A stretch of 64,000 nucleotides of DNA, taken from the NCBI GenBank assembly GCA_053919585.1, contig CM132785.1; one strand, written 5' to 3'. A program made the position numbers and the translations under genes. Positions 345-62,900 of this stretch are shown one piece after another (position 1 is the first letter of the stretch; every line of letters starts with the position of its first letter). The DNA is from Euprymna scolopes (lineage: Eukaryota). Below the pieces are notes generated by a model that saw only the letters and a list, made by a program, of their open reading frames with translations, did not search any database and was not told the DNA's origin.

Positions 345-1289
345 CTGATTAACGTAATTGGTAAGTAAATACCATGTTATATTAAATCATAAAGACATAA
401 TTGCCTCATTACTGCATTAAAAGTATATGAAAATATTTCGCTGAATTCATTTTATTTAATAAAACATTGTAATGTAATTCTCAAGAAAGTTTGATAACAA
501 TTTAACAAATGAAAGTGGACGAAATATAGAGCTTACTTTGAATTTAACAGAAAAAAAATTAATGGAGTTTAATTCAAGGGGTTTAAATGTTATAATTTTG
601 TAGGCAATGTTGCTTTACAAACATGTTTTAGTAAGTAAACATATTTGATAAAGGTCGATATAAATCTGTTTACTCTAACCTCCTTTGCCGCTGTCCAATT
701 TGTGAAGGGTTTTCCTGGCTTTATGGATGTCATCATCTAAATCAGTAAAGCCGGCTGTCACACAATCTTTAATGGCTTCATCCAACTTCTTCATGTCATT
801 TGATTCGAAGGCCGCATTCAGTCTTTCATGTAGATTTTCCAGGGAGAGACTTCCTGATAATCGAAAATCAATTTTACTCATATTTTTTCTTAATAAACAA
901 TAACAGACATAGGTTTTTTTGTTTTGTAAATCAAATGGAATAATTCCTTTATACAATGACTCTACATGCATGGCTTTCATGTTGCCATATTAACTGTATG
1001 AAATGAAACCAATTCTTTTGAATTGTTATGCGTATCATGGTGTGTTATTATTAATATTGGGACTATTAATCAGAATCGAAATCGAAAAAAATCGGAACTC
1101 TCTGAGATATCGGAATCAGAAAAATAATAGATTAATTTCCGATCCAAATGCGATTTTTACTTACTTATTTGTTATTTTGTTCAAATTAAAACGTAATTTT
1201 ATATTTCTCGCACAAATGAATAATATTCATAAATATTTTACAATGAGTTGTAATCTTGGATACGATACATAAAAGGAAAACATTAAGAA

Positions 1290-1356
<67 letters not shown>

Positions 1357-4300
1357 CTAAGATTTTAATGTAAATGAAGACTCTCTGCAAAATTACACAA
1401 TCAGAAAAAAACAATGGAAACCATACTTTTAAGTTGATTTTAAAATGTAGATCGGTAATTGGATCGGAATAAGTAAACATATTGGAATCGTCCCATCACT
1501 AGTTATTATATATAAACATTTTGGTTATAATGGATACCCATTTTATAAGATTAAAATAGATATAAATTATTATGTCGAATATTTCTAACCTCCGAATCCG
1601 CCTCCCATTTTCTTCAGTGCGTCCCGTGCACTACGAAGATCAAACGAAATTTCTGGGTACTTGGCTTCTTCAGCAATGTGGATCAGTTTCTCCAATCTTG
1701 CTCGGTCTTTGTGTTTCACAGCTGACTGCAACTGAGCTCGCAGTCTCGCTGGTGGCAGGTCTTCCAGAGAGATATCTAAGTGGAACCATATTATAGTTTT
1801 TTTATTGCATGAAAAGGACTGATAATTTTCATGTATAGAGATTTTTCAAGTGCATTTTTATGCTATATAAAGAGGGATTGATGAATCCCAATTGCTCTGG
1901 CAATATTTATGTTTACTTCTTAATATTTAATGAAAATTTGAATCAAAATATTTCATCATATGAGATGAATAATGATTAATTAGATAAAGTGGGATAGGCT
2001 GCTTAGATTAATACAAGATAGTGTATAATATTTGCAGCATCCGTTAAGAGTTATTTATCATCGTCACAGATCATTATAAAATTAGTGCTTTTTCAATGAA
2101 AGAGTCTTTATATAATATATATTTTAGGAGCATTTTAATTTGATAAGATATCGTATTTCACAGTATATAAGACGCACATTTCAATTTAAAAATACTATAT
2201 AAATAAAGAGCTTGCAATACGTGCTGATATTTTTAGTAAAGTAAATTTAAATTAGAAATCAACTGAAAAATTATGTGCTAAAATATGCTATGAGTTAATT
2301 TTTTTATAAACGATAAAACTCGCGTCTTATATACCGAAAAATATTAGAATATATTAGTATAAACTCATTCTGATATTCAATGGATCCGATGTATGTATCT
2401 TTATCATTCAGAAAAAAATTATTCAGCATAAAATAAGAGTAATTGAGCTGGCGTTTATTAAAATACAATCTTGAAGGTAATTTACACAATTTAATAATTT
2501 TCAAAAAAATTGTATAGAATACATAAAAGTAGAAATATTCGAACCTGCTTCTGCATGTTTCTTATGGAAGAGACTGAACTTAGGAGATTTCAAATGGAAT
2601 CGAGGTAATGACATAGTTCCTGATAATTAAAATTAATCACATTTTGAAGACAAATCATTTTTATATTCATTATTAATTATTAAGTAAAAGACATATTTTG
2701 CTTATATACACTTTTATACGAAATTATCTCTGATTAGAGTTAACCGTCCTGTAACACAAGTAAAATTGAATCTTTATTTCGTGACGTTAGTCTGTTACTT
2801 AACTTGAATTTATCAGATACATATTAATATTTTTTAATTAAAATGAATTACCATAGTTGATTTTCTAGATATCTTACATTTACATAAATATTTCAGAAAT
2901 ACAATGTTATGAAGAGTTTCTTTAAACATGTAATTTACTCATTTATGTGATATTATAGAAAATGATGCAAATCGGGACCAATATAAATGGATAGATCAAA
3001 CCTCTGTGAGATGCTTCAAGAGATTTCAGATGAAATCTAGCCTCGTGGATATTGGGCGAAAGTTCCGGGTATCCGGATTTGACACATTCGGCTATTACTT
3101 TCTCAAGAAGGTCTGGATCGTTTTTCTTCATCGCTTTATCTAGCTTCAGGCGGAGTTTATCTACACTCAGTTTTCCTGACAAACAAAACGTACCAATAAA
3201 GAAATGACAATACCATTACTACCCAAAGGTAGGTGATAAAGAGATAGAATACCGGAAAAGTCAATACATTTTATGAGTTAGGTGAGCCGTGTCATATGAA
3301 TCTAATGGTTTTAACATGTGGATATGGATATTTAGTTTCATATAATATTATGTGTTGAATGTTATCACTAGGCGATAGCACGGACAAGAAAAGAAAAACA
3401 ATAATAAAATGAAATCGGATGATTATCTATTGATGGATTATAATTGACGTGAATGCTGACTTGACACATTTGCACATGTAAATGAATAGTTTCACGTATG
3501 AAAGTGAAGATGAGTGTATTACACAGTACAATTATCATAGTAATGAAATTAATATCTTATACAACGAATATAAAATAATTACTATTAATATATGTCATAT
3601 GATTTACTTAGGTTGATAACATGAAAAGTTAGAACAATCTGAAAACATTTCGAACGATTAAAGTCATGAATTCAAATGATCATAAATGATGAATTTGTAA
3701 TTTAGAACAAGAGAAAACTCGATTATATTAGTTAGAAGAAATATCACTGTAAATATATTTAAATTCAGATTATTAGGGATGGTTTCATCACCGATACATT
3801 TTTGAACAAATAACAATATTTGTCATTAAAATATTTAGTTGGATTTGTTTAAATTAAAATGAGTATATAAGTAAAAGTGTCATATATTAAATATCATTTC
3901 AAAAAAAAGGTTTTCAATAAAATATCTTATCTAGTGATACTTATTGTAAATGATTATGAAAAATAAATGAATTGATGTTAGACAACGTATGAACTAACCT
4001 TCGTGCCCAGATCCCAGACCATCTAGAATATCCCTGGCCTGAGGGAGATCAACGGATAGCTCTGGATAACCAGCTGCCACACATTCATTGATAACCTTCT
4101 CCAATTCTAGCTTGTTCTTAGATTTCATGGCTGCGTGGAGTTCACCTCGCAGGACATCGAGTGGTTTTACCCCTGATTGACATAATTAGTGTTGTTAAAA
4201 TATTTGTAAGAGAAAAGGTCATTTTGATATTTAAAAAATGGATCAGGGAATTAAAATTAGTAGTGAAAAAAAAATCAAATTTTCTAATAGTCATAAAAAA

Positions 4301-7300
4301 ATATTTTCCTGTAATCTGATTTGAATGTTATCTCTAACTTTATATACAAAATATATATTCGGAACAGGCGTTCCAAGATATATTTTGATTTGGCTTAGGA
4401 CAATTAATCCAAATTTAAACCGGGAATCAAAAAGGAAAAAAAATGAAATCGTGCTTATTTTCCAATGCCAAAAACGATTATTTTAATATTTATTTGTTTT
4501 GTTTATTTTATTTATAACTTTATTTTCCATTGATAATACTACTAATAATTATAGATATTTATTGATTTTTAAATTGCTTGTAAAACAAATTTCTATGGAT
4601 TAACTCTCGCAAGTGTGTTATTTACGTTCGCACATATTACATGTGTTTTAGGGCAATCCGAAAAGAAAGGAAAGAAAAACAACTCTATATTATATTAAAA
4701 TGTCATAAACGAATCGGAAGCAGTAATTGTATAGGAATCGGAAATTTAGAACTGAGTCGGTAATTGTATTGGAATTGGGGAAAAATATTCGAATCATCCC
4801 ATTACTAATTTTGATATTATTTAATGATATTTCTGGTAAGATCCGCCATAAAATATTGCATATGTGCAAACTATCACCGATTATATAGTGACGTTACTTA
4901 TCTTAAAAATGTTAATTGACAAATACACATTAAAGAATCATTTATTTGATCAAACGATTATTTTTTATGCCGATTGAACTTACCATAAGTCGATACATAA
5001 TTTATAAGTAATTTATTTTAATTCAAATTCACATATCATTTCAGGTAATTATTATTATTTAACTAATAAAATTTTGGATTAAATTATCTAACCTCCGGAT
5101 GCGCCTTCCAATTTTAGTAGGGCTTCTCGTGCGTCACGGAGATCAAACTCCAGTCCTGGAAGTCTGGATTTCTCGGCAATGTCAATAAGTTGTTCTAACT
5201 TAAGTCGGTCTTTATTCTTAATAGCTAAACGCAGTTGATCTCTGAGGGAGTCTGGTGTCATGCCTTCCGCAGTAATATCTAAGTAAAATTAGGTGTAAAA
5301 GTTACATGTTAGTACATAATTAATTATTGTATTAAACTAGTACATATTTATACAAATTAAGATTCCAAATTATTTCAGATAAAATTGTATGGGTCTGATT
5401 GTTTTCATGCACACGTAAACATTGTAAGTGTATAATTAATGTAAATATTAAATAAAACATTAAAAATGAATTAATTTACTTTGTTATTTAAGATTAGATT
5501 TTTATATTTTAAAAGTCAGGATTAATGAAAGTTATTATTAGGCAATGATTATATTATATTTAACTTTATTGTTTTATGACACACAGTTTTTACCAAACAA
5601 ATATTCGTTACGATATGTTATTAAATTATTATTAATGATAAAACGTTTAAAATTGTCATTAATTTAAATATATATTAAAGATAAATGATTTTAATTTGAT
5701 CAACCATAAAAACAATAACATTTTTTAAATGTAAATTTTCTAAGTATTAAAAATTCAAACACGCATAATAATAATTTGTAAATAATTCGAACCTGCACCT
5801 CCATGTTTCTTACGGAACAAACTGAATTTAGGAGCCTTGAAATGGAAACTTGGAAACGACCATGATCCTGATAATCAAAATTAATTATATTGACTTATTA
5901 CAAAGTTATAATTACTTATGAATATAATTGGTAACATTTACTTCATAAGTTTTTCTTGACTCAGAAGATCATAATTTACTTTTTCATTTTTATACTACAA
6001 TATGTTATATAGATTATATATATATTAATATTTTTACATTTGAGAAACTGGTTTAAATTTATTACGACATTACCATTTATCCAAACACGTAATATTAAAC
6101 GAAACATATAGATTGTGTCTCTTTATTACTTAAAAAAACTGTTTTCCATTATACTTAATTTCAAAAACTAATTAAAAGCAATTGCAAAAGCAATCAGGAA
6201 AATTTACAAAATAATAAACATATATTTATGTTCTATTTATTGGATTACTCTGAACTTATGTTAAAAATTTTATTAATTTAATAAAAAAAATACTGAAATT
6301 AAATTAGAATTAATCAACAGTCATGCAATAAGTGATGAAATTATGAGATTTTATTGTTAAATATGAAAATATGTTAAGAAATAATTAGACTTTTATAGAG
6401 ATTGGAGAATACACATTAAATCAAAGAAACACACCTTTGTCACTTCCTTCTAAAGATCCCAAATGGAGTTTTGCTTCTTTGATATCGGGTGACAATTCTG
6501 GATATCCAGAAGCGACACATTCGGCTATTACTTTCTCCAGAAGGTCTGGATCCTCTTTCTTCATAGCGGCGTCTAGTTTCAAGCGGAGTTGATCTACACT
6601 CAGTTTACCTGATGAACAAAAACGTACCAATGACTATAGCAGTATAACTATTTCAATCTCTAAAGAGTAAATCGAAAATGAGAAGACATAGATTTAAATT
6701 AGAAGTAATTGTTAATATTCAGTTTTACTACAGAATTACATGATGCATAGATTTTAAAAATAATTCTAACCTCCAACTTCGCCTCCCATTTTTTGGAGAG
6801 CGTCTCGGGCGTCACGAAGATCGACGTCTAGTTCTGGATATTTGGCTCCCACATTAATAAGTTGTTCTAATTTCAGTTGGTCTTTGTTCTTTATAGCTAA
6901 CCGAAGCTGTTCACGTATGGCTTCTGGTGTCATGTCTTCCAGTGAGATATCTATGTAAAATTACATTTGTAACAAATTTTTAGTTACTATTTTACTTTTT
7001 GATATGTTAGCAACTATATAAGTTTACGACATGTTTAAATTTGAAACATAGTATGTTATTACTTAGCAGGATAGTTCACCTAATTACATATGTAATTTTA
7101 AGTGAGAAATACAACTATTTCTAACATTATATATAATATATAACATTTAATATAAGAAAAATATAAATGAATATTTATGATATATTGTATATGTGTTAAT
7201 ATATACACCCATGCATGTGATTTTTTTTAATGTGAGAAGATATATAATCATTTCGACAACCAAATAACGTCACAGTTCACACAATCCCGAAATGAGGGCG

Positions 7301-10059
7301 AAATTCAAGTTTAGGACTTCTGGTCTCTATTTCCATGGCTTGTATGAGCGGCGATATTGTTTGATTGTGAAATGATGATTACTTATATGCGTGTGTATAT
7401 TCGGTTTTAGCAATTATATAATAAAAGTTGTGAATTTATATTGATTTGTGAATGACATTTATTATATTTTGATTCAAAAAGATTTCACAAAACATATATA
7501 ATGTCTAATAGAAATACGGCAAGGAAACACTAAGAAAATCTTATAATTAAATAAAGATCTTTGTTATTTGCGCTTTCAAGGAAATGTCAACTATCGAGTG
7601 TTTAGAATATTTTAAAAGAAAATAAATAAAAGATTCGAACCTGCATCTCCATGTTTTTTACCAAACAGACTGAACTTGGGAGATTTCAAATGAAATCCAG
7701 GAAATGACCATGATCCAACTGATGATGAAAAAATAATGCCCCTTTTTAGTGAATTATAAATAAATGACCCGATCCGATTTAAATATATCTCACAGTTCAA
7801 GAAACTTTATAAGGCAAACTTATTCACATATAAAAGGTGTTGTAGTTAATTAATAGTAATTCATTGTATTCAAGTGAGTTTAATAACTTAATGGAAAATG
7901 AATAATGATACCACATAGTTTTATACTTTCATATTTTTACTTATAATTAAAGACTGTTTCATTATTTTGTATGAATGTATACAAAATATTGATTGTATAG
8001 GATTACGATTTAAAAAGAAAAGAATCATTATAATATTGTTAAAATACTTTGATATCTAAGGATCTCGTTATTCATAACTTAAAGTAAAATAGGCTCCATT
8101 ACAGTAATCGATTTAGAGGAATTAGACAAACCTCCATCGCTCTCATCAAGGGCATCCAGATGAAGTCTGGCCTCATGAATATCGGGTAAAAGTTCTGGAT
8201 ATCCCGAAGCGACACATTCGGCTATTACTTTTTCCAGATTGTCGGCATCGTTTTTCTTCACAGCACCTTCTAATTTCAACCGGAGTTTTTCTAAACTCAG
8301 TTTTCCTGATAAACAAAAACGCACCAATTACCACAATATTAAAATTATCCTTGTCAGTATGGAGTAAAGTGAAAATAAGTTTACGGGAGAAGGAGAAAAC
8401 GAAATATAAACAAATGAATGATTTGATAAGTTTTAATTTATTGTAAATTTGAAAATTATATCCACTGAAATCGTGATTTAAAAAGAATAAAACATAAATA
8501 AAAATGCATTAACTTATATTAAGTACGTCTGGAATGAGACAGTTTACGACTTTACAAATAATATTGTAATGAAGGATATCGACTTAATAAATCAACAAGA
8601 ATCCAAGGACTAACCTCCACGACCAAATCCCATGCCGTTAAGAGTGTCTCTGGCTTGGCGAAGATCAAAGGAAAGTTCTGGAAAGCCTGCTTCTTCACAT
8701 TCAATAATAGCATTTTCTAATTCAACCCGGTTTTTGCTTTTGATTGCCGCATTTAGTTGTGCTCGGAGAGCGTCTGGTGTTTTCAGTTCTGCTTAACGTA
8801 ATAATCAATGTTAAATAAGATTCTTGAAATAAAATAATATCGAACTAGTTACATATTTAAGCGTGTCTTTAGTTAGTTGAATGTAAAATACTAATAAAAG
8901 TTCATAAAGATAAGACTTTGTTTACACTGAAATCGTATTTATATTAATATTATGTGAATCTGAATTCAATTACATTTTTGACCATGTATTTAGTACTCTA
9001 AATACAAATCATGTTTGACATGGTAATAAAGATGAGAATTTAAAACGACACATTTCTATCATTACTATGATTAATGATAATCAATAAATTGATTTAACGG
9101 AAATATAAATACAATTCTTTAAGTTATTTCGTAGATCAAAATCTTTAGACTCTAACCTCCTTTGCCACCTTCCAATTTGAAGAGTGCTTTTCGTGCATCG
9201 TGAATATCGACATCAAGGTCTGCGAAACCGGCCGATATGCCTTCTTTAATAGCGACATCCAACTTCTTCCTGTCCTTTGATTTGAATGCTGCCTTCAGCC
9301 GTTCACGCAGATTTTCCAGTGAGAAACTTCCTGATAACCGAGAATCAATTTTATTGATACTTTAATATTAAATACCTCAAAGTTACGTTCAGTTAAAATT
9401 GCAAACCGTTTTAACTTCAATAATCAGCGCTTTAAAATGAGTAGAAATGTTCCCCTTACAATTAAGTCTAGTGTATATAATAACGTATTTACAGATTAAT
9501 GTATTTTAATTTACGATAACAAATGGATTATCCGAAAGTATTGTGAACTCTTTAAAAGATTTAGTTAATTTATAATACAGAATTAATGGTAGTAAATGTT
9601 ATAAAAATCTAATTTTTATAGCAATATATTATTATTAACACCATTAAATGAATTATTTCAAATTACGATGCGCCATTATAGGTACATGATTAATATTTTA
9701 TAGTTAGAGAATTAATTATATTTAATTTTCTAACCTCCAAATCCGCCTCCAAGTTCTTTGAGGGCTAGTCTGGCATCCCGGAGATCATATGACAGTTCTG
9801 GATATTGGGCTTCTTCAGCAAGCTCAATAAGTTTTTCTAATTTTGGTTTATCTTTATTCTTTATGGCTAACTGCAGTTGAGCACGCAGTTTCTCTGGTGT
9901 CAGGTCATCAAGAGAAAGATCTACATAAAATCATATGTAAAACATTGTCTTAGTGCGATTTTAAAATTTGTATTATATTTTATAATTAAAAACAATTTGT
10001 CATACTATATTTACATATATATATATATAATTATATATATATAATTATATATATATAAT

Positions 10060-10090
<31 letters not shown>

Positions 10091-12746: not shown

Positions 12747-12805
<59 letters not shown>

Positions 12806-15438: not shown

Positions 15439-15485
<47 letters not shown>

Positions 15486-33771: not shown

Positions 33772-34235
33772 TATTTTTGTCTTTTCATTAGGTTTCATAT
33801 TTTGAGAACCATGTTAAATTTACAAAATAAAAACAGGTTTATTTTCATAAGTAAATATAACTTGAAATTTGAAGAGGGTGTAAATAATAACGCCAGGAAA
33901 ATATGCATAAAAAAGAAAAAATAGTTACTTTAAGATTATTCAGTTTTTAATTCTATGAAATATAAATTCTAACCTCCTTTTCCGCCTTCTAATTTAAAGA
34001 GGGCTTGTCTGGCATCTTGAATGTCGGCATCCAGACCCGGGAAGCCGGCAGATACACTTCCTTTAATTGTTGCATCGAGAGCCTTTTTGTCATTTGATTT
34101 GAAAGCGGCCCTCAGTCGTTCGCGCAGACCTTCCAGTGTGAAACCGCCTAAGAATCGAAAGTCAATTTGTATTCAGGAGAAATATATACGTCATGATATT
34201 AAATGAATTATGTAAAATTAATTTATGAAATTACA

Positions 34236-34297
<62 letters not shown>

Positions 34298-34705
34298 TGG
34301 TATGTTTACAGAAATATATCCATATTGAAATAGTTTCATTTACAATATAAAATAGAATGCAATGAATGTATTTGTACTATTAAAATAAGTAGATTAAATC
34401 ATTATAAAAAAATAAATTCTTTTGTATTTTCTAACCTCCAAATCCGCCTCCCAGTTCTTTGAGGGCAAGTCTGGCATCTCGAAGATCATACGACAGTTCT
34501 GGATATTGAGCTTGTTCAGCAAGCTCAATAAGTTTTTCTAGTTTTGGTTTGTCTTTGTTTTTTATGGCTAACTGCAGCTGTGCACGTAGTTTCTCCGGTG
34601 TCAAATCATCGAGAGAAAGATCTACATAAAATTATGTATGAAACATTGTCTGAGTAAATATCTTTAATTCGGTGCATATTTGAAAATTAGCAAACATTCA
34701 TAATG

Positions 34706-34739
<34 letters not shown>

Positions 34740-49700: not shown

Positions 49701-51036
49701 TAGAATATTTCTAACCTCCAAATCCGCCTCCTAATTTGTTGAGAGCTTCTCGGGCGTCACGAAGATCAAACGCTAATTCTGGAAATTGGAGTTCCTCGGC
49801 AATCTCAATCAGGTGTTCGAGTTTAGCTCGGTCTTTGTTTTTCACAGCTAATCTCAGTTGTTCACGAAGATTCTCTGGTGTCATCTCTCCCAGAGATATA
49901 TCTATATACAAACATATTGAACAATTGCTTTATATCGAAATACTAAAATTTATTTTACATGCATTATAGATTCCGTACATACTTAATTTAATTAAAAAAT
50001 AAACTTTATACGTAGGTAATATAAACGAATAATAATAATAATTATAATGATAATAATAAAGTAATAATAATAGTCACTATTATTATTATCACAATAATAA
50101 TTATTAGTATAAGTATTACAATAATAATATAAAGCATTACAAAATCTTTATTTATCAGATAGATAGACACCATAGAATAGACTAAGCAAGTATTTATGAT
50201 TTTACCTTTCAGTTATTACAATTAATGGTGTAGACTTTGTTCTTATAGAGATAGAAAAACTATTCGACAGTTTTACTCACGAGACTTCTTGTGTCACTCG
50301 AATTTGATAAAATTATGGAATTTTATACATATACATATCCTTCTTTATGAATTATGGAATATTATATGCATACATATCCTTCTTTTCACAACAACAAATA
50401 GCGTATTCTATTTTAATGTAATCTACTCTATTGAGGCATTATATCGATCCTTTCATACGATATGAGGAGTAAAGTTAACAGATAGGAGAGAAAGAGTCTC
50501 TATTACGAATACAGAAGCATTCTATGGCAACCCATTACTTCGATACTTCCAGTAAATATATACTCTTGTTAACTGCCTCATTTTGCCATTTCATTTCGAC
50601 CCTCTAAACCCACGATACTTTACTATGCATTATGTGACTTTATTAAGTGGACTAATTCGGAAATTACTATGAAGTATTAAGTAACGTGCATAAAATAAAT
50701 TTTAGAATACGCAATGAAAATATAATAATAGTTGTGAGAAAAACTGTCGAAATATCAACATCCATATTCAATTAATCAGTATTTAAATCTTAATACATTT
50801 TAATTAATACAAATGCGAATTTTCAAATATTACTGTATGTATTAATAAAATTTCGAACCTGCGTCTCCATGTTTCTTACGGAATGGACTCATACTTGGGA
50901 GTTTCATATGGAAGCCAGGAAATGAGAAAGACCCTGATAACCAAAAAGCACGTATGATTATGACAACATCAACGTAAAAGCTCGATAAATATCAGACGTT
51001 ATTGGAAACTTATAAAATGTTTAATAATATCACCAG

Positions 51037-51092
<56 letters not shown>

Positions 51093-54000
51093 TATATATT
51101 TACTCAATTATTTATTTCTCTCTATATATGTGTATGTGATAAATTTGTACTGAATTTAACTCAAATCATATGAAAAAAAAGTTATTCGCTTACCCTCAGC
51201 CAAAACGAATTGATTGCAATTTAAAAACAAATTTGTCCAAGGACTTGAAAGACAGTCAATAAAAGAAGAAAAGTTTGGTGAATTTAACATGAAGAAATCA
51301 TTTGTTTTGAATATATCCAAACATATTTTAAAATATGATATATGTTACTTTAAAAGTACTTTGCTCAATTAGGATTAATGTTATCGACAGGGACAAACCT
51401 TTGCCACTGCCCCCTAAAGATTCCAGATGAAGTTTGGCAGCTTCAATATCAGGTATAAGTTCTGGGTATCCAGAACTGACACATTCGCCGATTACTTTCT
51501 CCAGAAGATCTGGATCGTTTTTCTTCATGGCAGCATCTAGTCTCAGACGGAGTTTGTCAAGACTCAATTTTCCTGATAAATAAAGACAAGGGCCAATAAT
51601 AAGAAGAATGATCTAGTTCCACACGAAACGGTTATCAGCAAAACGACAAATAGAATAGTGTCATAAATTAAAGAGAAAAGTATTACTATTTGAAAAGTTA
51701 TAAAAGTTGAGTTGTACTCGATTATATTTTTAAAACACATAAGACGATAATATATATCTACATGAAGATTATAATATCCAAAATGATTACATTTCGATTT
51801 TAAATCTGTTAGATGTGAACATTAAAAACTTAATGAAGATAAATCACAGATCATTCTTGTTTTACACTTTTGATATAATCTAGATTGTCATGCACTTAAA
51901 TAATAATATTAAATAAGATAATTTATATTGAATGATTTCGAGTTATTTGATTGAGACAAAATCAAATAAATAGGTCTTATACTGAATTAAAAATTATATT
52001 CTATATAAAATGTTTGGAAATGTATGAATGTTTGTTGTCGGTTAAATTAAAAGAAAAATATGTCGCACCTCCTTTTCCCAGATCCAACTGTAATGTGTCA
52101 CAGGATTTATGGATATCAGGTTCAATAACAGGGACGCCGAGGGATATGCTTTGTTTCACAAGAGCATCCAGGGCCTTTGTATCTTTGGACTTTCCTGACA
52201 ATCGTAACTTATCTCCTGATAATCAAAAGCCAATTGCAATGCATAGGTTAAAACAAAGTATATGACAGTATGTACATTATAATTTAGAATTTACATGCTC
52301 AAGGACAATAAGATGGGCTTGTAATTTAAACAAAACTATCTTCGCTGCCTTATTTATATTATTACAGAGATATTTTTTCTGAAACAGATAATTTATTATA
52401 ATCAACATTGCAATAATGTTTGAAATGTTTGACTAGATGATTTTTATAATTGTTTGTCTATTAACGAAAAAGTTAATAATCTTTATCAAATATAAGAAAT
52501 ATTTTTCTCCACAGAAAATAGATAAATAAAACAAGTATATCATGGAAACTCATTTAAATGAAAATTGAGTCTTATATTCGTATTGTATTACGAATAGAAT
52601 AACCATTTAAAATGATACAATAATGTAATGATTTAGTAAATGTATTTTCGTTTAAATTTGTTTACATATTTGAAACTTGGTTAAATAAGAAATGTACTTG
52701 GTAAAATATGTACTTTTTATAATATATAATTTTTAAAATATGTAAATTCTAAAATATACACTTTCTAAAATATGCAGTTTCAGAAATAGCTACTACTTAC
52801 AAAAAGAAAACAAAACAATGGTGCATGCGATATACTGAATACCCATTTTGAAACGACTGAAGAGAATACTTGAAATTTATATAATCTTTATAATAAAAGG
52901 GATGATACACCATACATAAATAACTATCCAATAATTAACAGGAAAGCAGAAATATTACAATTATTAATTATTGGCCATAGTAAATCTGCATTTTGCGTAA
53001 CCATGCGTAAATCTTATTAGATTTTCATTAAATGAAATGTTTATAAATGGATAATTATTTGGATACAAAATAGGTAAACGTGTAATACACACAAATTTAA
53101 TAGCTAATACGTTAGTGGTACTTTTAAAATGATGCAAACCTTCATCTCCTGGTTTTTTACGGAAGAGACGCATGCTAGGGAATTTCACATGGAAGCCGGG
53201 CTTGGATCCTGGGAATCGAAATTTGATATTTCAAAGAAATGCTAAAGGAAAATGATTGTTCTAAAGAAATATATTTTTCTAAAGATTGTATTAATTTTAT
53301 ATTATACTAAATAAGGAAATGTGCTATATACGAAAGGAAATTTACTGTAAATAATATTTCTTTAAAAATTAGAAAAATCATTAAAATAAATGTTTTCTAA
53401 ATTGAAGATAACATAATCATATATGACATCATTAATTACTAATTACTCTTTTACAAGAAAGTATCAACAATTTACAAATTATGTCTACTGTGAATGTCTT
53501 ACTTCTCTGTTCTAATCAAAATTAATTTTATAATACATATAGTACTAGAATCAATCTCAGGAAGAAAAACAAACCTTTTACGCTTCCCGTCAGTGAATCC
53601 AAATGAAGTCTAGCCTCTTGGATATCCGGCCAAAGTTCCGGATATCCGGAACTGACACATTCGGTAATCACTTTATCCAGAAGATCTGGGTCGTTTTTCT
53701 TCAGAGCCCCATCTAGTTTCAGGCGAAGTTTGTCAACGTTCAATTTGCCTGACAAACACAAGCATACCAAGGACAATGATATCAGACCGATTCGTATATG
53801 AAGATTTAGAGTTAGAAAAGTTGAAGGAGAACCGAGATATTTTAAAGGATTGAATTTGAATATGTTTTTGAAGTTTCTTTTAAATACACTTCAGTTGTTT
53901 GAACGTTACATGTCATGGTTAATATTAAAATACTATTTATTGTTATCCATTTATAACTAATATTGATATATTTTATTTAAATTTTGATTAAATAATCAAT

Positions 54001-56894
54001 ATAATGAATGCATTATATTTAACAAGTAAGTTGCTTCTAATAAATGCTGTTATCAGATATATGTTTTATGCTAATAATTAATTCAAATATGCTAATTTTA
54101 TACGAAACTTATGAGTAAAGTAAAATAACATTCAATCTATAAACTGAACAGATTTGCTTCATTCATTTAGCATGTACATGTGGGTTTTGTTTTACATTTA
54201 ACAATTAAAAGAATCTTTTAAAAATTGAATGTTTTAATCGAAATATCACAAGTAACGAAGATCGCTCCAAATTAAAACTACTTGAGAATTTAAACTGAAG
54301 GAAAATCTAAATAATATCAGCAACATATTTAAGAGACAGAATGATAGAAATATTAACATGAAAAATATCATCGATTATGTATAAGCAATTCGGACCCGTA
54401 TTATAATTGATTGAAAACATTAATACGGTAATGGCAGATATAAGTTCTGTAAATTTAGAAACAAAAGAATATAACACTAACTTGATAATTAACGTGTTAA
54501 TTACTAACCTCCACGGCCAAAGCCCATACCGTTCAGTGTGTCTCTGGCCAAACGAAGATCAAGACAGAGTTCCGGATAACCGGCTTCCTCACATTCAATA
54601 ATGGCCTTCTCCAGTTCAACCTTGTTCTTGCTTTTGATTGCTGCTCTTAGTTGACCACACAAAGCTTCGGGTGATTTGAGCCCTAATTAATGTAATTTTT
54701 GTACGAAATACTGATTATTGAAAAGAAGATATATATTTAAAATTGTTTAATTATAATGCGATTATCTTAATTCTTAAAAATTTGTAATACACTTTAACTT
54801 TGATAAATTTAATTATATATAATTATATTGAATAAAAAATAAATAAAATACTTTTAACGGCAAATCGCATTTAAGACTCCGTAATCACAACTAATAGGAA
54901 ATAAACCCATTAGGTCCCACTGTCTTATAAATAGGACACCAAATGATTTATTTTAAAAAACCTAATACCACTATTTATGGCATATTTATTCTGGCGAAAT
55001 GGTAGAATTAATCTATATTAATTAACTTCTCTCTGAGAGTTGTTGGAGCACTCTCAAGAATCCTAAAATTTGCTAACATTCTATTTGTTTGATCATTTAC
55101 AAACTTATATAAATTAATTTTGCAATAGAAAGCAGCTAACTTGTTCCCAAAAGTCCAATGTAACTCATTGTGTTAAGTGCTTTTATCCATACCACGTAAA
55201 CTTATCTTAAATGTATAACCTCTTGATTTCTAAAGTATATTACATGTACTCGGTGTCCTATTTATAGGAGAGTCGATATTTCGCTTTCTTATAAAATAAA
55301 TAACGTTTTCATTTCAATTTGAGTATTTTAAACTCATTTTAAGATATTACACAAGGTTACAGCTCAATAAAAAAGACTGTATACACTAGGACCTAATAGG
55401 TTAAATATATCCTTTTAAAATGGTAAATTCATAGGAAATATAAAGCTTAAAATAACCTCCTTATAGATTTACTTTCGATAAACTGAGTTTGTAAAATATC
55501 TAACCTCCTTTTCCGCCATTTAATTTAAATAAGGCTTCTCTAGCTTCGTGAATGTTTGGTTCGAGTCCAGGAAGACCAGACCAGATGCTTTCTTTTATGG
55601 CAACATCTAAAAGTTTCTTGTCCTTGGATTTAATGGCTGCTTTCAGTTTCTGACGGAAGTCATCGACAGATAGATTACCTGATAATGAAAAATCGTTTTT
55701 CTTGTAAAACCTTACATCAAATATATAAAGTACGAATATTAAATTCTAAATCAAATATATCGTTATAACAACTTATTATTTATATTGATATATTTTAAAT
55801 TTTAGTTATGTAATTGATAAATGATATACAACAGTAAGTATTTTCATGATAAATGCTGTTATCGGACTATGTTTTTACATAAATTATTTAAATATGCTAA
55901 TTTCGTTAGGAAATGATGAGCACACATTGTATTTGCCGATGACGGATTATGAGTTAGCTTCTTTTAAATATATAAATATATAAGTGATTGGAATATTTTT
56001 ATTAATAATTAGAAATATAAAATATGTCGCGATATATAATTTATTTATAAAACAAAATATCCAGATAATCTTGAAATCTAACATTAGAAATAAAAAGAAA
56101 TATTCGTCATGATCTGCTAACCTCCAAATCCGCCTCCCAATTTGTTTAGAGCCACACGAGCCTCACGTAAGTCAAACGATAGTTCTGGATATTCAGCCTC
56201 TTCAGCCTCTAAGATAAGGTTCTCGAGTGCTGCTCGATCGTTATCCTTGACGGCCAGTTGAAGTTTTTCACGCAGCATGTCCATTGAAATATCATCCAGA
56301 GAGATTTCTAAGTAAAATGATAATCAGAGTTTTCTGAACCACAAGATTATGTATAAGATAGCTGGTAAAGAATTCGATTAGTAAACACTGCTGTATAAAA
56401 TGTAGCCATACTTTAAATTGCGTTGATCTTTTATAGGTTCAACAAAACATTTTTCAATAATCTCATGAAATGATTTATGAATCTACTTTATCTGGTTTTA
56501 TAATAAATACGAAATAGAATATATTATACACATACACACACTTACACACACATACTTACACACACACACAAATATATATATATCTATATACATATATATA
56601 TATATACATATTTATATATTTTATAATATAAGTTTACGAATAATTCTAAGGTAGATATTTACTTATTGCCCACCACAGCAAGATATGATACAAAGTCCGA
56701 AAGTGGCGTGTTCAAGCCAGCACCCCTTAAGGAGGGACACTCTGGCCTTACGATAATTGCCTGAGCATCCCCGTCGACATTCTCTGGTAAAGAAATCGAC
56801 GAGTTACAATAATCTTTAATCAACATATTTTTGTTATTTATTTCATACGATAACATACACACGCATACATACATACATACACACATACACACAT

Positions 56895-56950
<56 letters not shown>

Positions 56951-59900
56951 GCTGTGTTCATAACTATTCGATTTATATTCATGAATATAATTAATTAGTT
57001 TATTCAAAAATAAAATTCGAACCTTCGTCGTCATGTTTCTTGTGGAACAAACTGAACTTCGGAGATTTAAAATGGAGTCGGGGTAATGACCATGTTCCTG
57101 ATAATCAAAATAATGTCATGCTTAATACAATACAGATAAAACTATCGTATATGTATATAAAATATAATTTTTATGATCATTATTAATTCATTTGTATTTG
57201 CCGATGACGGATTATGAGTTAGCTTCTTTTAAATATATAAATATATAAGTGGTTGGGAAGATGATGGAAATAGAATTATTCGTTTTTAAATTAAATATTG
57301 ACCTAAAACATATTTTTAAGTATAGTTAAATAGCATTATTTTTAGAAGAAATGGATCAGGTTCATTTAAACTAACGTATTTATGTGGTGTGAAGCGATAT
57401 ATATATTTCACAGAATCATATTTGTAAGAATATTATAATGCAGTTGACGAAGGAAACGAGAGAGAACGCACCTTTTATACTTTCTTGTAGAGAATCAAGA
57501 CGTAGTCTGGCCTCTTGAATATTGGGCAAAAGTTCTGGATATCCTGAACAGACACATTCAGTGATCACATTATCCAGAAGTTCTGGATCATCTTTTTTCA
57601 TTGCCCCGTCTAGTTTCAAGCGGAGTTCGTCTACACTCAATTTTCCTGACAAATTAAAATTACCAATGATAATAATATCAACACTATTTCACGTAGCGGA
57701 AAAGATAATAGGAATGCATAAGGAGATATCAATAACAATTCTGTGTGTGATAACGGGTAATAGAAAAGTAAGAATGGCAAAGTGTGGAGAGATGGTTATA
57801 ATGCGATTATTCAAGAATTATTGAAGATGACTGCTTTGGATTGCATAGAAAATTCGATCAGATTATTAATCGAAACGATTGCATATGTTTTTGCTCGTTA
57901 TAACATTCAGAAAAAAATTGATTGGGTTGTTTTTTATTAAAAATACTTAATTTCTATTTACAAGCTTACTATATAATTACAAACAGAATTTCAAAATATA
58001 TTTGACAAATATTTAACATACAGATAAATTATTTTCAGAAATAGCAGATTAAAATTTAGTCGAATATTGAAGAGATATAGAGTGTCAGCATAAAAAAGTA
58101 AAACTTTAGAGAAAAGGATGGTTACATTAAGAAATCGTGAACTACTATTTAAATTTTACTAACCTCCACGACCAAAACCCATGCCGTCCAATGCATCTCT
58201 GGCCATACGGAGATCAAAAGATAGTTCCGGGAAACCGGCTCCTTCGCAGTCAATGATGGCCTTCTCTAGTTCAGCCCTATTCTTGTTTTTAATCGCTGCT
58301 TTTAATTGGGCTCGGAGAGCGTCTGGTGTCTTCAGGTCTGATTAACGTAATTATGGATGTATAACAACGTGTTAGATAAAGAGAATTGAACGTTTTGATC
58401 TTTATTAATCATTCTTAGTTTTTCAGTTTAGCTTTTAATTAATAGATAATATTTATATAATTTATTAAATATTGTTGATACAAAAATAACAATTGTACTT
58501 ATGTGAATATTATTTCAACCTGTTACCCGGAATGAAGTCGTTATATTTACAACAGTTTTTGTAGCAATATTGTCATGACTACTTCACTATGGATTAAATA
58601 AGCCTTTATGTTCTAGTTTTGTTAATTACTAGACTGTTACCAGCCGAATAGGAAGGCTTCTGGCTTCTGCCAGCGAATCGTTGTAAATATAACAAATCTG
58701 ATTTGTATAATAGTTGAAATGTTATATAAATTATAGCAGCATTTCAATAATATCAAAGACTACATGAATATTATATAATATAAAACATATTCATAAAATA
58801 TTTTTAATATTTTAATTTATTATCTGCAAATAAATATATTTTGGAAATAAAAATTATAAGAATTACTGTTAAATGTATATAAAATCGTCTCTAACCTCCT
58901 TTGCCACCTTCCAGTTTAAACAAAGCACCTCTGGCTGCTTGGATGTCAGCATCAAGGCCAGGAAGGCCGAGCGATATACTTTGTTTAATAAGAGCATCCA
59001 GAGCTTTCCTGTCGTTTGATTCAGCCGCTGTTTTCAGCTGCAATCGGACGTCTTCAGGAGATATCGATCCTATGAATCGAAAGTCATTTTCAATGCAATA
59101 TTTCAGTTTAAGTATTTAATTAAAAAAATGAGTGTATCTAAACCAAAATTATATGTCAACTATAAACGGAATGAATTCTTTACTTGCTATAATTTAATAA
59201 TTTTGTAAATGTACTGTTAAATTATAATTTTTTTTAAATAGAATGGAAACAATATTTAATAATATAGAGGGGTCATAGAAGGCTATTACAATGCAAGAAT
59301 CGATATCTGTCGGTATTGTGAAGGAAAACACAAACGATGCAATTATGAAAAATGTTAATCTTATTTGATTAAGTCCCAACTTCTACTGGGTGATATAATT
59401 TGTGTAACCGCGTTTCATAATATATCTCGAGGTAAGATATCTTTATTAAATGATGAGTGTTTTAAATCTCTTGCAGTTCTTCGTCTATGACCCCGTTACA
59501 TGCATATTACACACAATTAAAACCGTTGCATCTTATTATAATTAATTGAATTGTATTGTAATATAGAATTTACACGATATATATACTTTTATTTAATATC
59601 CTTGATTTACACATAAAATAAATGATTTTAAGGGAATATCGAACCTCCAAATCCGCCTCCTAGCTTGTTGAGTGCAATTCTTGCGTCACAAATATCAAAC
59701 GCCAGTTCTGGGTATTGGGCTTCCTCAGCAATATCAATAAGTTCTTCTAATTTTTGTTTGTCGTTGTTCTTTATAGCCAATCGTAGTTGATCACGTAGAG
59801 CGTCTGGTGACAAGTCGTCCAGAGAGATATCTATTTCAAATTATATAAAGTATTTCAGATACACGTTTGCCTAAATATACATAACGTCATATACATTCCT

Positions 59901-62900
59901 AATTTGACCAAATTTTGTCTTGTTTATACTCTCAATCTTAAAGTAGTTTTCTTCGAAAATTCAAATGAGCCAATAAAAAATGGCATTAAAATAATATTTA
60001 AAAAGAAGGAGATCGTTAAATATATTAATGAGACATATGTTTTTCAATTAGATATATCCATCAATTATATTCTTGAAAAGTTTAATACGATATTATTAAT
60101 AGCCTAAGCGTAGATTAATATTGCTTTATTACATGTTTTTTTTAAATGCGTGAAGCTAATTTTAAATGAGTGTTTATTTATTTATATAATTATTCGAGTA
60201 TCAATATCTTGAATGAATTATCTAAACGAATGAGCGTTATATTTACTTAAAAACGTTAATGACATTTTATTATTTTGATATAATTTTATTCGAAAACGCT
60301 TAAATTACATATAATAAAATACAATTATCACTTTTTTGTAAATATTGTCAAAGCAAAATTAGTCGAACCTGCATCTCCATGCTTCTTACGGAACATACTG
60401 AACTTAGGAAGTTTCATGTGGAACCTTGGTAACGACAGAGACCCTAATAAACAAAAGTAAAAGCCTTTTAAGAACACTAGAAATTACATAAACTACTACA
60501 AACGTTACAGTGTTCGAATATTATACTAGTATTTTTACACCTTTTTAAATCTTGTGTTTAATTTAAGAAATACCGGCGTTATATTTCACGTAAATCATTA
60601 ACTATCAATTTCTGATATTAAAGCTATTTTACTTTGAAGAACCATTTTAAAACATTTAACCAACATATCTATTTAATAAATAGATAATTCTTATGAATGC
60701 TTGTATATGTTAAAGAAATACTACTTTATCGAAAAATGTTAAAACTTTATATATAATCAATCATATAACATTACATTTAAAGCTTTATCATTAATATATG
60801 GCAGCAGTTAATAAGCCTAATAACCACGAACCTCTAGCATTTCCTTCCAGAGATTCCAGTTGAAGTTTGGCCTCTTCAATACCAGGCAAAAGTTCTGGAT
60901 ATCCAGAACTAACACATTCGGCAATTACTTTCTCTAAAACATCTGGATCTTCTTTCTTCATGGCTGCATCTAGTTTGAGCTGGAGTTTGTCAACGCTCAA
61001 TTTTCCTGACAAACAAAACGGACCAGTGATAACATTATTTAGATAGCTACCTATGACGGATAGAAATATAAATCGTAATTCATTTTAATTCATCGAAAAT
61101 TATGAAATGCCACCCAAGACAGTGGCAGAGGAGATTCTAAATTATTTAGTATATTTTACAAAAATTGAATACAATATTATAAATAATAAATTAAACTTTC
61201 ATTAATATATTCAAAATTATGAACGTAACCAAGGTGAATAAAATTTCTTTATTTATGTAATTTATTTATGTGTAATTATAATTGTCATATATTTTTAATG
61301 TTAAATTTAAGAATAATTTTATTTCAGTAGAACCTAAGTATAACTGCGGTATTATTTCTGTATTTAGCTGGAAATGGAATAAGGTTACAAAACAGAAAAC
61401 AGAAGAGGAAACTTGTATATAGAATTAATAAATAAGAAACCTGGAATCGATGCGAATAAAAAATATTGGAAAACGAATTACTTATATTTTTACTGAGTAA
61501 TATGTTTAGTAGGAAAAGTATATAAAACTGTACCTCCTTTTCCTCCTTCCAGTTTAAATAAGACATCTCTAGCTTCTTGGATGTCGACATCAAGGCCTGG
61601 AAGGCCAAGTGATATGCTTTCGTTTATAAGAGCATTCAGAGCGTCTTTGTCTTTAGATTTGGCTGCTTTCTTCAGTTGCAATCGCATGTCCTCAGGAGAT
61701 ATAGATCCTGATAATCGAAAATCAATTTAATTCTAAATATACTTATGAATAGAATTTCCAAAAAAACTACAATCATGATTAATCAAGGAAGTAAAGGAAA
61801 AAATTAGTATATATGTTTAATTAGGTAAAGGTACAGAATAGTTTACATTTGATATCTCTTAAACCAAATGAAAAAATATGATTTATAGAAAAATATATAT
61901 TCACAAAATTTTAGGACTAGGAAACGATTTGCCATTTTTTTAAGTAAAAGTACAGAATAGCTTACACTCAAGAATTTGTAAACCAAACAAAATCCTGGAA
62001 CCTTCATAGTTTTAGCTCGTGTAAATAATGTATAAGAATGTTAAGCAGTATAAAATTATTGCATATCGTTTCTTCACTTTAAAACTATATGGATTAAGAA
62101 AGGAAATTTTCTAATCCGTTTTATTGAAATTATGTGTTCACGAGTTTTACCAGTGCTTTGATTTTTACCGTTTAATTGATTCGTTTCAAACATTGCTAAA
62201 GTTTACTGTTAAATTTTATTATTTATTAACAATTAAAATATATGTCACCATATGTTATTGAATTATATAATCAAATTAAAAATTTATCTGACGTGCCGAT
62301 TAATTACATTGATTAAGATAAAAAAGTTAGTGATTTCAATTTGAATATCTAACCTCCGAATCCGCCTCCTAATTTGTTGAGCGCAATCCTGGCATCCCGA
62401 AGATCAATAGCAACTTCTGGATATTGAGCTTTTCCGGCAATCTCAATAAGTTCTTCTAATTTTGGTTGGTCACTGTTCTTTATGGCTAATCGTAATTGTT
62501 TACGCAGAGCGTCCGGTGACATGTCCACGGAAATATCTACGTAAAATGACACAAATTATCTTACTAAACGGAAACGACATTTTATTACTTAATGTAAAGT
62601 TACATGACACTTCTTATTTATGAAAACTTAATTTGAAAAATTAGATAGAAGCATTAAAATAGTGTGAATAATAAAATGATAAAATAGTCTTTTAAGCAAT
62701 ATGAAATTAATGTATATATTATTAGTTCAATACATTTATTATCGTTTGCTCTTATAGCAATATTCTATTCATTAATAATCATGTTACTAGAATTATAATA
62801 TAAAACGTTTGGTTCATTCTAAAATATTCAGAAAAAAACGTAAATATGTTGTTGTTTTCAAGATTAAAGTTAAAACCAAAATTAACCAATAATGAATGTT

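What the first reader, a model, noticed from the sequence alone, without database searches (positions are those of the whole stretch)
675..62536. Splice donors overlap a Gly-Gly-STOP: 54 of 60 B/C/D exons are potential terminal exons
Seen: B, C and D exons end GGA G|GT TAG (TAA at 37631; GAA G|GT TAG at 3999). If the donor is not used the protein stops two codons later, typically ending -GRGG, -GKGG or -GFGG. Counts are 17/19 B, 17/20 C and 20/21 D, against only 2/22 A and 1/22 E. Inference 1: the array arose by serial duplication of an ancestral LAST exon whose GG-stop was co-opted as a donor. Inference 2: donor skipping with intronic polyadenylation gives a ladder of lengths, each ending in di-glycine. 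Established: C-terminal di-Gly is the conjugation motif of ubiquitin-like modifiers and is also the C-end degron read by CRL2-KLHDC2, so truncated products could be tagged for conjugation or destruction. The null explanation is inheritance of one ancestral donor sequence.
Basis: partly seen in the sequence, partly recalled or inferred. Interest (0 to 1): 0.8.

Follow-up and report, generated by a model that had tools for sequence, protein, structure and literature searches.

The report
Gly-Gly-stop splice donors, repeat exons
The window is the inside of a giant repeat-protein gene in which most exons end at an unusual splice donor (G|GTTAG) that would read Gly-Gly-stop if left unspliced; the pattern is real and old, but it looks like an inherited, splice-constrained donor, not proof of a ladder of truncated proteins.

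Summary
On the minus strand, 54 of 60 exons of three classes end GGA G|GT TAG (one TAA), against 2/22 and 1/22 in the other two classes. The window holds 82 unit exons (174 or 186 nt) and 22 linker exons (75 nt). All are phase 1-1, and together they encode about 5,380 aa. Each unit is predicted as a three-helix bundle with a Gly-rich tail. The closest named relatives are the repeat region of octopod KY-like (transglutaminase-like) giant proteins. The last Gly is automatic, because a phase-1 donor with G at -1 reads GGT. The penultimate Gly belongs to the linker. Only T at +3 is odd. That T is gene-wide (77/82 units, 18/21 linkers), including two classes whose donors (GTTTGT, GTTCGA) give no stop. 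Each class keeps its own hexamer across several related genomes, and the stop-free classes are conserved as well as the stop classes. TAG outnumbers TAA about 55:1, so +5 G, which is a splicing constraint, is what is held. Octopus gene models splice through the same donors. Introns are unalignable beyond +6, and poly(A) hexamers show no strand bias. A fail-safe stop or a di-Gly degron role remains possible but untested. The N gap lies inside an intron.

The parts
171..63737 (-). Tandem exon array, open at both window ends. It holds 82 unit exons and 22 linker exons, all phase 1-1, about 16,140 coding nt (about 5,380 aa). Class order in transcription: EBCEBCDEBCDE C EBCDE x14 ... EBEBDEBCD.
   Evidence: hmmsearch of all ORFs; classing and exon lengths; linker exons
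34436..34621 (-). Representative B exon (186 nt). The unit ends ...LGGGFG, the donor is GGAG|GTTAGA, and the in-frame TAG is at 34431-34433.
33974..34147 (-). Representative C exon (174 nt). The unit ends ...LEGGKG and the donor is GGAG|GTTAGA.
33326..33499 (-). Representative D exon (174 nt). The unit ends ...GFGRG and the donor is GGAG|GTTAGT. AlphaFold2 predicts three helices plus a disordered Gly tail.
32576..32749 (-). Representative E exon (174 nt). The unit ends ...DDTDG and the donor is GGAG|GTTTGT, with T at +3 but no stop.
32061..32135 (-). Representative linker (L) exon, 75 nt, encoding SWSFPSFHFKAPKFSLFSKKHGDA. The donor is CAG|GTTCGA, with T at +3 but no stop.
37626..37634 (-). 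The single TAA variant: B exon donor GGAG|GTTAAT.
3994..4002 (-). D-type exon ending GAA G|GT TAG; the read-through peptide ends ...SGHEG.
36839..37002 (.). Assembly gap. It lies wholly inside the C-to-D intron (36446-37141), and the exons on both sides are complete.
52069..52210 (-). Degenerate C-type unit. It scores 34.8 bits against 90 or more for typical C units, has an in-frame stop just upstream, no AG acceptor at the class position, and the donor GTGCGA. It is probably a decayed pseudo-exon.
35132..35206 (-). The one linker exon whose donor is GTTAGA (read-through ...GDAG-stop).
38637..38810 (-). One of two E exons with GAAG|GTTAGT (stop). The other has its last exon base at 29642.

Best explanation
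The window is the interior of one very large gene on the minus strand. It is built from a super-repeat of five exons: a 25-aa linker and four roughly 58-62-aa three-helix-bundle units. Every exon is phase 1-1, and the boundary falls inside the Gly-rich linker that ends each unit.

All unit exons descend from one ancestral exon whose donor was G|GTTAG. The 'Gly-Gly-stop' has three parts:
- a linker Gly encoded GGA, where the A is the donor's -2 position;
- the codon G|GT, which reads Gly at any phase-1 donor with G at -1;
- T-A-G at +3..+5, where A and G are the normal donor consensus and only the T is unusual.

The hexamer is kept by ordinary purifying selection on a working splice donor. The exons are internal exons that are spliced through, and the stop is a by-product.

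Shown: the anatomy, the homology, the conservation pattern, and splicing through such donors in octopus gene models. Inferred: that these donors are used constitutively or as cassette exons in the source organism, and that the stop has no function of its own.
For: 1. All 82 units end at the same AG|GT in phase 1. Exon lengths are 186, 174 and 75 nt.
2. Conservation is confined to -3..+6 and falls to near-random from +7. Introns of different super-repeats do not align by blastn.
3. T at +3 is present in 77/82 unit donors and 18/21 linker donors. This includes classes E (GTTTGT) and L (GTTCGA), which give no stop. None of the 103 donors tabulated is GTAAG or GTGAG.
4. Each class keeps its own hexamer in related genomes: B GTTAG[A/C], C GTTAGA, D GTTAGT, E GTTTGT or GTTGGT, L GTTCGA (loci L004, L005, L011, L015).
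5. Between the window and those loci, 4-fold sites differ by 0.42-0.52 and intron +7..+30 by 0.58-0.65. Donor +3..+6 differs by only 0.05-0.21, and the stop-free E class (0.15) falls inside that range (the same holds within the window).
6. TAG:TAA is 55:1 in a 28% G+C sequence. So +5 G, a splicing requirement, is what is held, and not 'any stop'.
7. Octopus models (P0152, P0157, P0166, P0156) join units head to tail exactly at this boundary. Their genomic donors include GGAG|GTTAG.
8. Where the stop is absent, the next in-frame stop comes after 3-38 codons. That is no earlier than the roughly 12 expected from composition, so there is no sign of selection for early termination.
9. AATAAA and ATTAAA show no strand bias in the introns.
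Against: - T at +3 is a mismatch to the GTRAGT consensus that reflects pairing with U1 (PMC1779574). Splicing constraint alone would tolerate or favour T to A/G, yet no GTRAG donor occurs among the 103 tabulated here. T or C at +3 dominates a database-wide census: of 118 single-unit ORFs, 60 stop at once, 14 continue with Q and 11 with L, and only 1 with K and 2 with E.
- GGAG|GTTAG is shared with Octopus sinensis (43 donors in L009), so it has lasted a long time.
- Stop-bearing hexamers vary somewhat less (6/60) than stop-free ones (about 12/43).
- One NCBI octopus model (P0166) ends exactly at ...GSFGG, with the stop inside GGAG|GTTAA.
- No RNA data from the source organism were available, so use of the donors there is inferred.
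Confidence: 0.6

Rival explanations
1. Fail-safe stop. With more than 100 weak donors in one transcript, an in-frame UAG at +3 ends translation at once if an intron is retained. The result would be a clean truncation and an NMD-type target. The product would also end in -Gly-Gly, the C-degron read by CRL2-KLHDC2-type ligases, so mis-spliced products would be destroyed. On this view the stop is itself under selection.
For: - T at +3 has been retained against the U1 consensus across octopus and the window's lineage.
- 60 of 118 family ORFs database-wide stop immediately.
- The three classes with an invariant ...G-x-G-G end are the ones carrying TAG.
- Precedents: truncated selenoproteins ending in di-Gly are cleared by KLHDC2 (PMC9098119), and stops in introns serve as back-up for weak splicing (PMC2809761).
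Against: - T at +3 is held equally in the E and L donors, which have no stop.
- Donors without the stop show no early replacement stop.
- TAA is almost never used although it would serve as well.
- AT-rich introns supply a stop within about 12 codons anyway.
- GTAAG and GTGAG donors are tolerated at homologous octopus exons.
- The last Gly is automatic.
- Whether a KLHDC2-type pathway exists in this organism was not tested.
Confidence: 0.15
2. The weak donor is the selected feature. U at +3 (and the UAG it creates, a motif of the kind bound by hnRNP A1-type repressors) keeps U1 binding weak. The symmetric 1-1 exons can then be skipped in a regulated way, giving in-frame size isoforms. The stop is incidental.
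For: - Not one of the 103 tabulated donors is GTRAG, in all five classes.
- All exons are multiples of 3 nt and phase 1-1.
- The octopus model P0166 joins class-3 units sometimes to class 4 and sometimes directly to class 1.
- Five resolved donors of an octopus KY-like paralogue that lacks the repeats all have a purine at +3. So GTT is not general in octopus, although the sample is small.
Against: There are no expression data. The exon skipping in P0166 may reflect broken copies in the assembly. The hnRNP link rests on my own recall and was not tested.
Confidence: 0.12
3. B, C and D exons are used as alternative terminal exons through intronic polyadenylation, giving a graded series of proteins that each end in di-Gly, for conjugation or regulated turnover.
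For: - The stops exist.
- Octopus model P0166 ends at GG-TAA. The 3.5-kb intron that follows has 7 sense against 2 antisense AATAAA.
- P0001 ends in donor read-through.
Against: - No intronic sequence is conserved beyond +6.
- Poly(A) hexamers are equally dense on both strands, and their distance from the donor is not conserved.
- The unit is a three-helix bundle, not a ubiquitin-like fold.
- Another model of the same octopus locus runs through as a 6,596-aa product.
- Gene models in repeat arrays are unreliable.
Confidence: 0.06
4. Historical origin. The ancestral unit was a last exon ending GGA GGT TAG. Duplication placed an acceptor downstream, and G|GTTAG was co-opted as a donor. This concerns origin only and is compatible with any present function.
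For: A stop codon must begin with T, which would explain why the whole family has the rare T at +3, including the classes that later lost the stop through changes at +4.
Against: - No homologue found ends at this motif as a true C-terminus.
- Octopus models end in a non-repeat tail.
- Protist homologues carry the units internally.
- Some units are fused without an intron, which fits intron gain or loss at an AG|G site in a continuous reading frame equally well.
Confidence: 0.1

Closest known systems
Octopod KY-like (kyphoscoliosis-peptidase-like, transglutaminase-like) giant proteins, e.g. Octopus vulgaris CAI9725887 (P0152), Argonauta hians LOC115214248 (P0157), and the Octopus sinensis 6,596-aa product at CM016865.1, about 71.2-71.3 Mb
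   Same: They have the same roughly 54-aa unit (D.LR..L..A.K..D...LE..I.EC..AGYPEL..D...AR..L..LGGG.GG) in long tandem arrays. There is one unit per exon, with the same phase-1 G|GT boundary, and GGAG|GTTAG donors occur in part of the octopus array.
   Different: Unit identity to the window is only about 45-50%. Octopus has a 4-unit super-repeat without the 25-aa linker exon seen here. Part of the octopus gene uses ordinary GTAAG or GTGAG donors. The N-terminal Transglut_core and Ig-like_KY domains lie outside this window, so they are not shown for this gene.
Modular exon arrays of giant muscle proteins (titin PEVK exons, nebulin super-repeats). From my own knowledge, not tested here.
   Same: One module per exon, symmetric intron phases, super-repeat duplication, and scope for in-frame exon skipping.
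   Different: The fold and sequence are unrelated. Those arrays are not known to me to carry a stop inside the donor.
Stop codons built into or near the 5' splice site as back-up for failed splicing (Farlow et al. 2010, PMC2809761)
   Same: An in-frame stop immediately after the donor, such that a retained intron terminates translation.
   Different: In the described case the stop comes free with the consensus GT(A/G)A in phase-2 introns. Here the introns are phase 1 and the stop needs the non-consensus T at +3.
Di-Gly C-degron pathway (CRL2-KLHDC2), which clears truncated selenoproteins (PMC9098119)
   Same: Premature termination products that end in Gly-Gly.
   Different: That pathway is shown in mammals for specific substrates. 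Here no truncated product, ligase orthologue or instability has been shown.
Ubiquitin-like modifiers with a C-terminal Gly-Gly
   Same: Only the last two residues of the hypothetical read-through product.
   Different: The unit is an all-helical three-helix bundle with a disordered Gly tail. There is no Pfam or PDB sequence match.

Membership tests
KY-like giant repeat proteins of cephalopods | Tandem units homologous to the repeat region of proteins annotated as KY-like or transglutaminase-like | tested here: met
   A profile of window units hits octopus proteins best among named sequences (P0001, E = 4e-43). P0152 and P0157 carry 10-16 such units.
KY-like giant repeat proteins of cephalopods | N-terminal Transglut_core (PF01841) plus Ig-like_KY (PF23265) domains in the same protein | not testable with these tools
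   These domains are present in P0152. The window contains only repeat exons, and both ends of the array run off the window.
Symmetric modular exon array (one domain per exon) | Every exon a multiple of 3 nt with the same phase at both ends, and one structural unit per exon | tested here: met
   Exon lengths are 186, 174 and 75 nt. Each has an AG acceptor and a G|GT donor in phase 1. The AF2 unit is one three-helix bundle.
Canonical U2-type GT-AG intron with GTRAGT donor | Purine at +3 | tested here: not met
   +3 is T in 77/82 unit donors and 18/21 linker donors, and no donor is GTAAG or GTGAG. GT at +1/+2, G at +5 and AG at -2/-1 are met.
Alternative terminal exons with intronic polyadenylation | A functional, conserved poly(A) signal downstream of the stop, and 3' ends in RNA | tested here: inconclusive
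   AATAAA and ATTAAA sit at similar density on the sense and antisense strands, at unconserved distances. There is no intron conservation beyond +6. No RNA data were available.
Ubiquitin-like modifiers | A beta-grasp fold immediately before the C-terminal Gly-Gly | tested here: not met
   The AF2 model has three helices (residues 2-13, 16-29, 32-48), mean pLDDT 80. Foldseek returns only generic helical bundles with E > 3. There is no Pfam hit.
Di-Gly C-degron substrates (DesCEND) | A translated product with a free C-terminal Gly-Gly that is unstable in a KLHDC2-dependent way | not testable with these tools
   Only the potential read-through peptide is known. The pathway facts come from PMC9098119.

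The most novel reading that the evidence does not exclude
The UAG at +3..+5 is itself maintained by selection, in several exon classes and in lineages as far apart as octopods and the source organism. It would act as a built-in fail-safe for a gene with more than 100 weak donors. Any retained intron would terminate translation at once and leave a Gly-Gly C-terminus that marks the truncated giant protein for C-degron-mediated destruction. This would be a splice-site-encoded quality-control device.
Probability: 0.15. Interest if true: 0.7.

Novelty: new variant of a known kind. Interest (0 to 1): 0.35.

Why it matters
If the ordinary reading holds, the value is descriptive. The window documents a very large, strongly constrained exon array, with first- and second-codon-position divergence of 0.02-0.06 against 0.26-0.32 at 4-fold sites. 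It encodes a helical repeat domain that has no Pfam family, in a KY-like giant protein. It also shows a whole gene running on non-consensus +3-U donors. That is a useful natural test bed for how weak donors are recognised in uniform short exons.

If the stop proved to be selected, it would be a new example of protein quality control written into splice sites. It would link intron retention to the di-Gly C-degron. Existing cephalopod RNA-seq and Iso-Seq data could test this directly.

Tried and rejected
- Family searches on the unit and on the linker peptide found nothing: Pfam and PDB sequence search.
- Foldseek of the AF2 model against the PDB returned only generic helical bundles with E > 3.
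- Rfam on the whole window found no match. Tandem Repeats Finder found only microsatellites and short intronic repeats.
- The source organism could not be named. The nearest anonymous ORF is 81% identical. The run and assembly accessions of related contigs are not mentioned in any searchable paper. Named homologues are all octopods.
- 'GTTAG is a common donor genome-wide' could not be tested in the source genome, because the window and all related loci contain only this gene. As a small proxy, five resolved donors of an octopus KY-like paralogue that lacks the repeats all have A or G at +3.
- A first attempt to measure intron similarity by global alignment was uninformative. It gave about 0.83 for everything in AT-rich sequence. 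I replaced it with blastn coverage and ungapped position-wise comparison.
- The test for strand bias of poly(A) hexamers was flat.
- The resemblance of the linker motif FKAPKFS to AHNAK-type repeats is from my memory only, and no tool supported it.
- The ubiquitin-like reading was rejected on fold.
- A literature search for GTTAGT-type donors gave nothing specific.
Full report
**What is in the window**

The sequence is 28% G+C throughout. GGAGGTTAG occurs 52 times on the minus strand and never on the plus strand. Each copy closes an open reading frame that ends in a unit of about 54 aa.

A profile built from these units finds 82 copies, all on the minus strand. They fall into four classes that cycle regularly. 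I name them in transcription order:
- B ends ...LGGGFGG.
- C ends ...LEGGKGG.
- D ends ...GFGRGG.
- E ends ...LEDSDGG or ...EG.

A fifth, non-homologous 75-nt exon (L, consensus GSWSFPRFHFKAPKFSLFSKKHGDA) sits between E and B in each cycle. BLAST found 21 copies and a pattern search found the 22nd.

Acceptors and donors sit at fixed offsets. Exons are 186 nt (B), 174 nt (C, D, E) and 75 nt (L). All are multiples of three and all are phase 1-1. The window therefore holds about 22 super-repeats of 783 coding nt, roughly 5,380 aa, and the array runs off both ends.

First and second codon positions differ by 0.02-0.06 among core copies, against 0.26-0.32 at 4-fold sites. So these are real coding exons under strong constraint.

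**The observation**

An in-frame stop at +3..+5 of the donor is present in 20/21 B, 17/20 C, 17/19 D, 2/22 E and 1/22 L. This gives 54/60 exactly as stated. The one TAA is near 37631 and the GAA G|GT TAG is near 3999.

**The assembly gap**

The N run (36839-37002) lies inside the intron between a complete C exon (37142-37315) and a complete D exon (36272-36445). The class order is unbroken. The reading frame across it is fixed by splice phase and not by the gap length.

The intron is 696 nt as written, against 335-474 nt in most copies. Hidden whole exons cannot be excluded. I did not try to recover the missing letters.

**What the protein is**

Neither the unit nor the linker matches any Pfam family or PDB sequence. 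AlphaFold2, given an alignment of 36 units, predicts three helices and a disordered Gly-rich tail (mean pLDDT 80). Foldseek finds only generic helical bundles.

A profile search of 1.84 billion representative proteins gives 212 hits. Most are anonymous single-exon ORFs. The best named ones are octopod proteins.
- Octopus vulgaris P0152 has Transglut_core and Ig-like_KY domains at the N-terminus, followed by 16 such units in tandem. Argonauta hians P0157 carries 10 units and the same two Pfam families in its precomputed annotation.
- In Octopus sinensis the units lie inside a gene with a 6,596-aa product.
- More distant copies of the domain occur in protist proteins, some of them myosin-like.

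So the window is the repeat region of a KY-like giant protein in an unidentified AT-rich animal genome. Its closest named relatives in these searches are octopods. The N-terminal domains are outside the window and are not shown for this gene.

**Anatomy of 'Gly-Gly-stop'**

The exon boundary falls in the flexible Gly linker.
- The last full codon is always GGA. Its A is the donor's -2 position, and the other Gly codons of the linker vary freely.
- The split codon G|GT reads Gly at any phase-1 donor with G at -1, so the second Gly is automatic.
- A at +4 and G at +5 are the normal donor consensus.
- The only unusual letter is T at +3, where the consensus GTRAGT has a purine (PMC1779574).

**Is the T tied to the stop?**

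It is not, in this window. T at +3 is found in 77/82 unit donors and 18/21 linker donors. That includes class E (mostly GTTTGT) and class L (mostly GTTCGA), where it makes Leu or Ser codons. None of the 103 donors tabulated is GTAAG or GTGAG.

Conservation is limited to -3..+6. From +7 on, identity is near random. Introns of different super-repeats do not align at all by blastn, although core exons are up to 87-98% identical to their nearest copy.

**Comparison with other genomes**

Five sets of anonymous contigs from related genomes carry the same classes, and where enough sequence is held they follow the same order (L004, L005-7, L011-14, L015, L001). Each class has its own hexamer there:
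- B has GTTAGA or GTTAGC, and GTCAGC once.
- C has GTTAGA, and GTTAGG once.
- D has GTTAGT, and GTCAGT once.
- E has GTTTGT or GTTGGT.
- L has GTTCGA.

Between the window and these loci, 4-fold sites differ by 0.42-0.52 and intron +7..+30 by 0.58-0.65, where random is 0.70. Donor +3..+6 differs by 0.05-0.21. The stop-free E class, at 0.15, is inside the range of the stop classes.

So the hexamers are under purifying selection, but equally with and without a stop.

A more diverged array from the same assembly as L004 (L002) has GTTAG at 13 of about 19 units.

In Octopus sinensis, one part of the giant gene (L009) is a young 2.2-kb four-unit super-repeat. Three of its four classes use GGAG|GTTAG. 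Its older neighbouring units have GTTAA, GTTCG, GTTTG, GTTAG, GTCAG, GTTGG and GTCTG. Further downstream (L003) the same boundary carries GTAAG four times, GTGAG, GTGGG, GTTAG twice, GTTTG and GTTGG.

Five resolved donors of an octopus KY-like paralogue that lacks the repeats all have a purine at +3. G|GTTAG is therefore probably the ancestral donor of this exon family. It is old, it is not a genome-wide habit in octopus, and it can be replaced by consensus donors.

**Are the donors used?**

There are no RNA data for the source organism. Octopus models join units exactly at this boundary. Junctions such as GGGRG|D.. and GGGRGG|T.. lie over genomic GGAG|GTTAG. P0156 splices GYGRGG|VKTPD over GGAG|GTTAGT.

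**For and against a function of the stop**

Against:
- The E and L control described above.
- TAG:TAA is 55:1 in AT-rich DNA, so +5 G is held and not 'a stop'.
- Donors without the stop run 3-38 codons to the next in-frame stop, which is no shorter than the roughly 12 expected from composition.
- Poly(A) hexamers are equally frequent on both strands and at unconserved distances.
- There is no conserved intronic element beyond +6.

For:
- A mismatched +3 T has persisted over long times.
- T to C changes recur (GTCAG), but GTRAG is absent in this lineage.
- Of 118 single-unit family ORFs in the database, 60 stop at once and only 3 continue with Lys or Glu.
- Stop hexamers vary somewhat less than stop-free ones (6/60 against about 12/43). 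The difference lies at +4, where A is the consensus anyway.
- One NCBI octopus model (P0166) ends at ...GSFGG over GGAG|GTTAA, and P0001 ends in donor read-through. These are fragments of a locus that another model reads as one 6,596-aa protein, so this is weak evidence.

**Verdict**

The best explanation is an inherited, splice-constrained, non-consensus donor placed in a Gly linker, with the stop as a by-product (confidence about 0.6).

Three readings remain open and are testable with RNA data:
- a fail-safe stop or di-Gly degron device, with precedents in PMC9098119 and PMC2809761;
- selection for weak donors that allow in-frame exon skipping;

The ubiquitin-like reading is rejected on fold. 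Origin from a terminal exon would explain the T at +3 but has no comparative support here, because octopus models that reach the 3' end finish in a non-repeat tail.

Noticed in passing
window 32061-32135 and 21 further copies (for example 35132-35206): A 75-nt linker exon encodes GSWSFPRFHFKAPKFSLFSKKHGDA. Its basic-aromatic 'FK.PKFS' motif reminds me of AHNAK-type repeats, but that is from memory only. It has no Pfam or PDB match. It is conserved in related contigs, and I did not see it in the octopus arrays I examined.
   Followed up: partly
whole window, e.g. 31581-34621 (one super-repeat): Core exons are up to 87-98% identical to their nearest copy, yet the introns between them do not align at all by blastn. 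4-fold sites (0.26-0.32) are much less diverged than intron +7..+30 (0.39-0.53 ungapped). This suggests exon-limited gene conversion, selection on synonymous sites (splicing enhancers for weak sites), or fast indel turnover in the introns.
   Followed up: partly
window 52069-52210: A degenerate C-type unit with a low profile score, an upstream in-frame stop, no AG acceptor at the class position and a GTGCGA donor. It is probably a dead exon. Both flanks of the array are irregular, with C and/or D units missing (order EBCE... at the 5' side, ...EBEBDEBCD at the 3' side).
   Followed up: partly
D-class introns, e.g. window 33313-33325; also L004, L001, L015: D introns often carry a G-run (ATGGG, ATTGG or CGGG) at about +9..+13 in several genomes. 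It is the only hint of conservation beyond the hexamer, and may be an intronic enhancer helping a weak donor.
   Followed up: no
L009 (Octopus sinensis CM016865.1, 71,214,727-71,258,711): A four-unit super-repeat of about 2.2 kb is repeated some 14 times with identical unit peptides and identical first 16 intron bases after each donor. Some copies are frameshifted or broken (L009 4929-5459, 6891-7028, 20412-20938). This is either a very recent expansion or assembly noise. NCBI splits the locus into several models, while another annotation reads it as 6,596 aa.
   Followed up: partly
L001 246-605; L002 5872-6231 and 10001-10321: In some related contigs two units are fused in one exon exactly at the usual boundary, for example ...SGKGG|LPSPD. 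This shows intron loss or gain at this site. L001 could also be a partly spliced RNA-derived contig, and the type of that sequencing run is unknown.
   Followed up: no
P0057, P0099 (protist proteins): The same three-helix unit occurs in multiple copies in long protist proteins that begin with a myosin-motor-like P-loop segment (P0057 is from Rhodelphis). It also occurs in the dinoflagellate Polykrikos (P0067). So the domain is ancient and widespread but has no Pfam family.
   Followed up: no
window 34237-34296, 33715-33768, 1297-1356, 10006-10090, 51038-51099: There are long (ATT)n and (AT)n microsatellites in the introns. The sequence flanking the assembly gap is ordinary AT-rich intron, not a microsatellite.
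   Followed up: no
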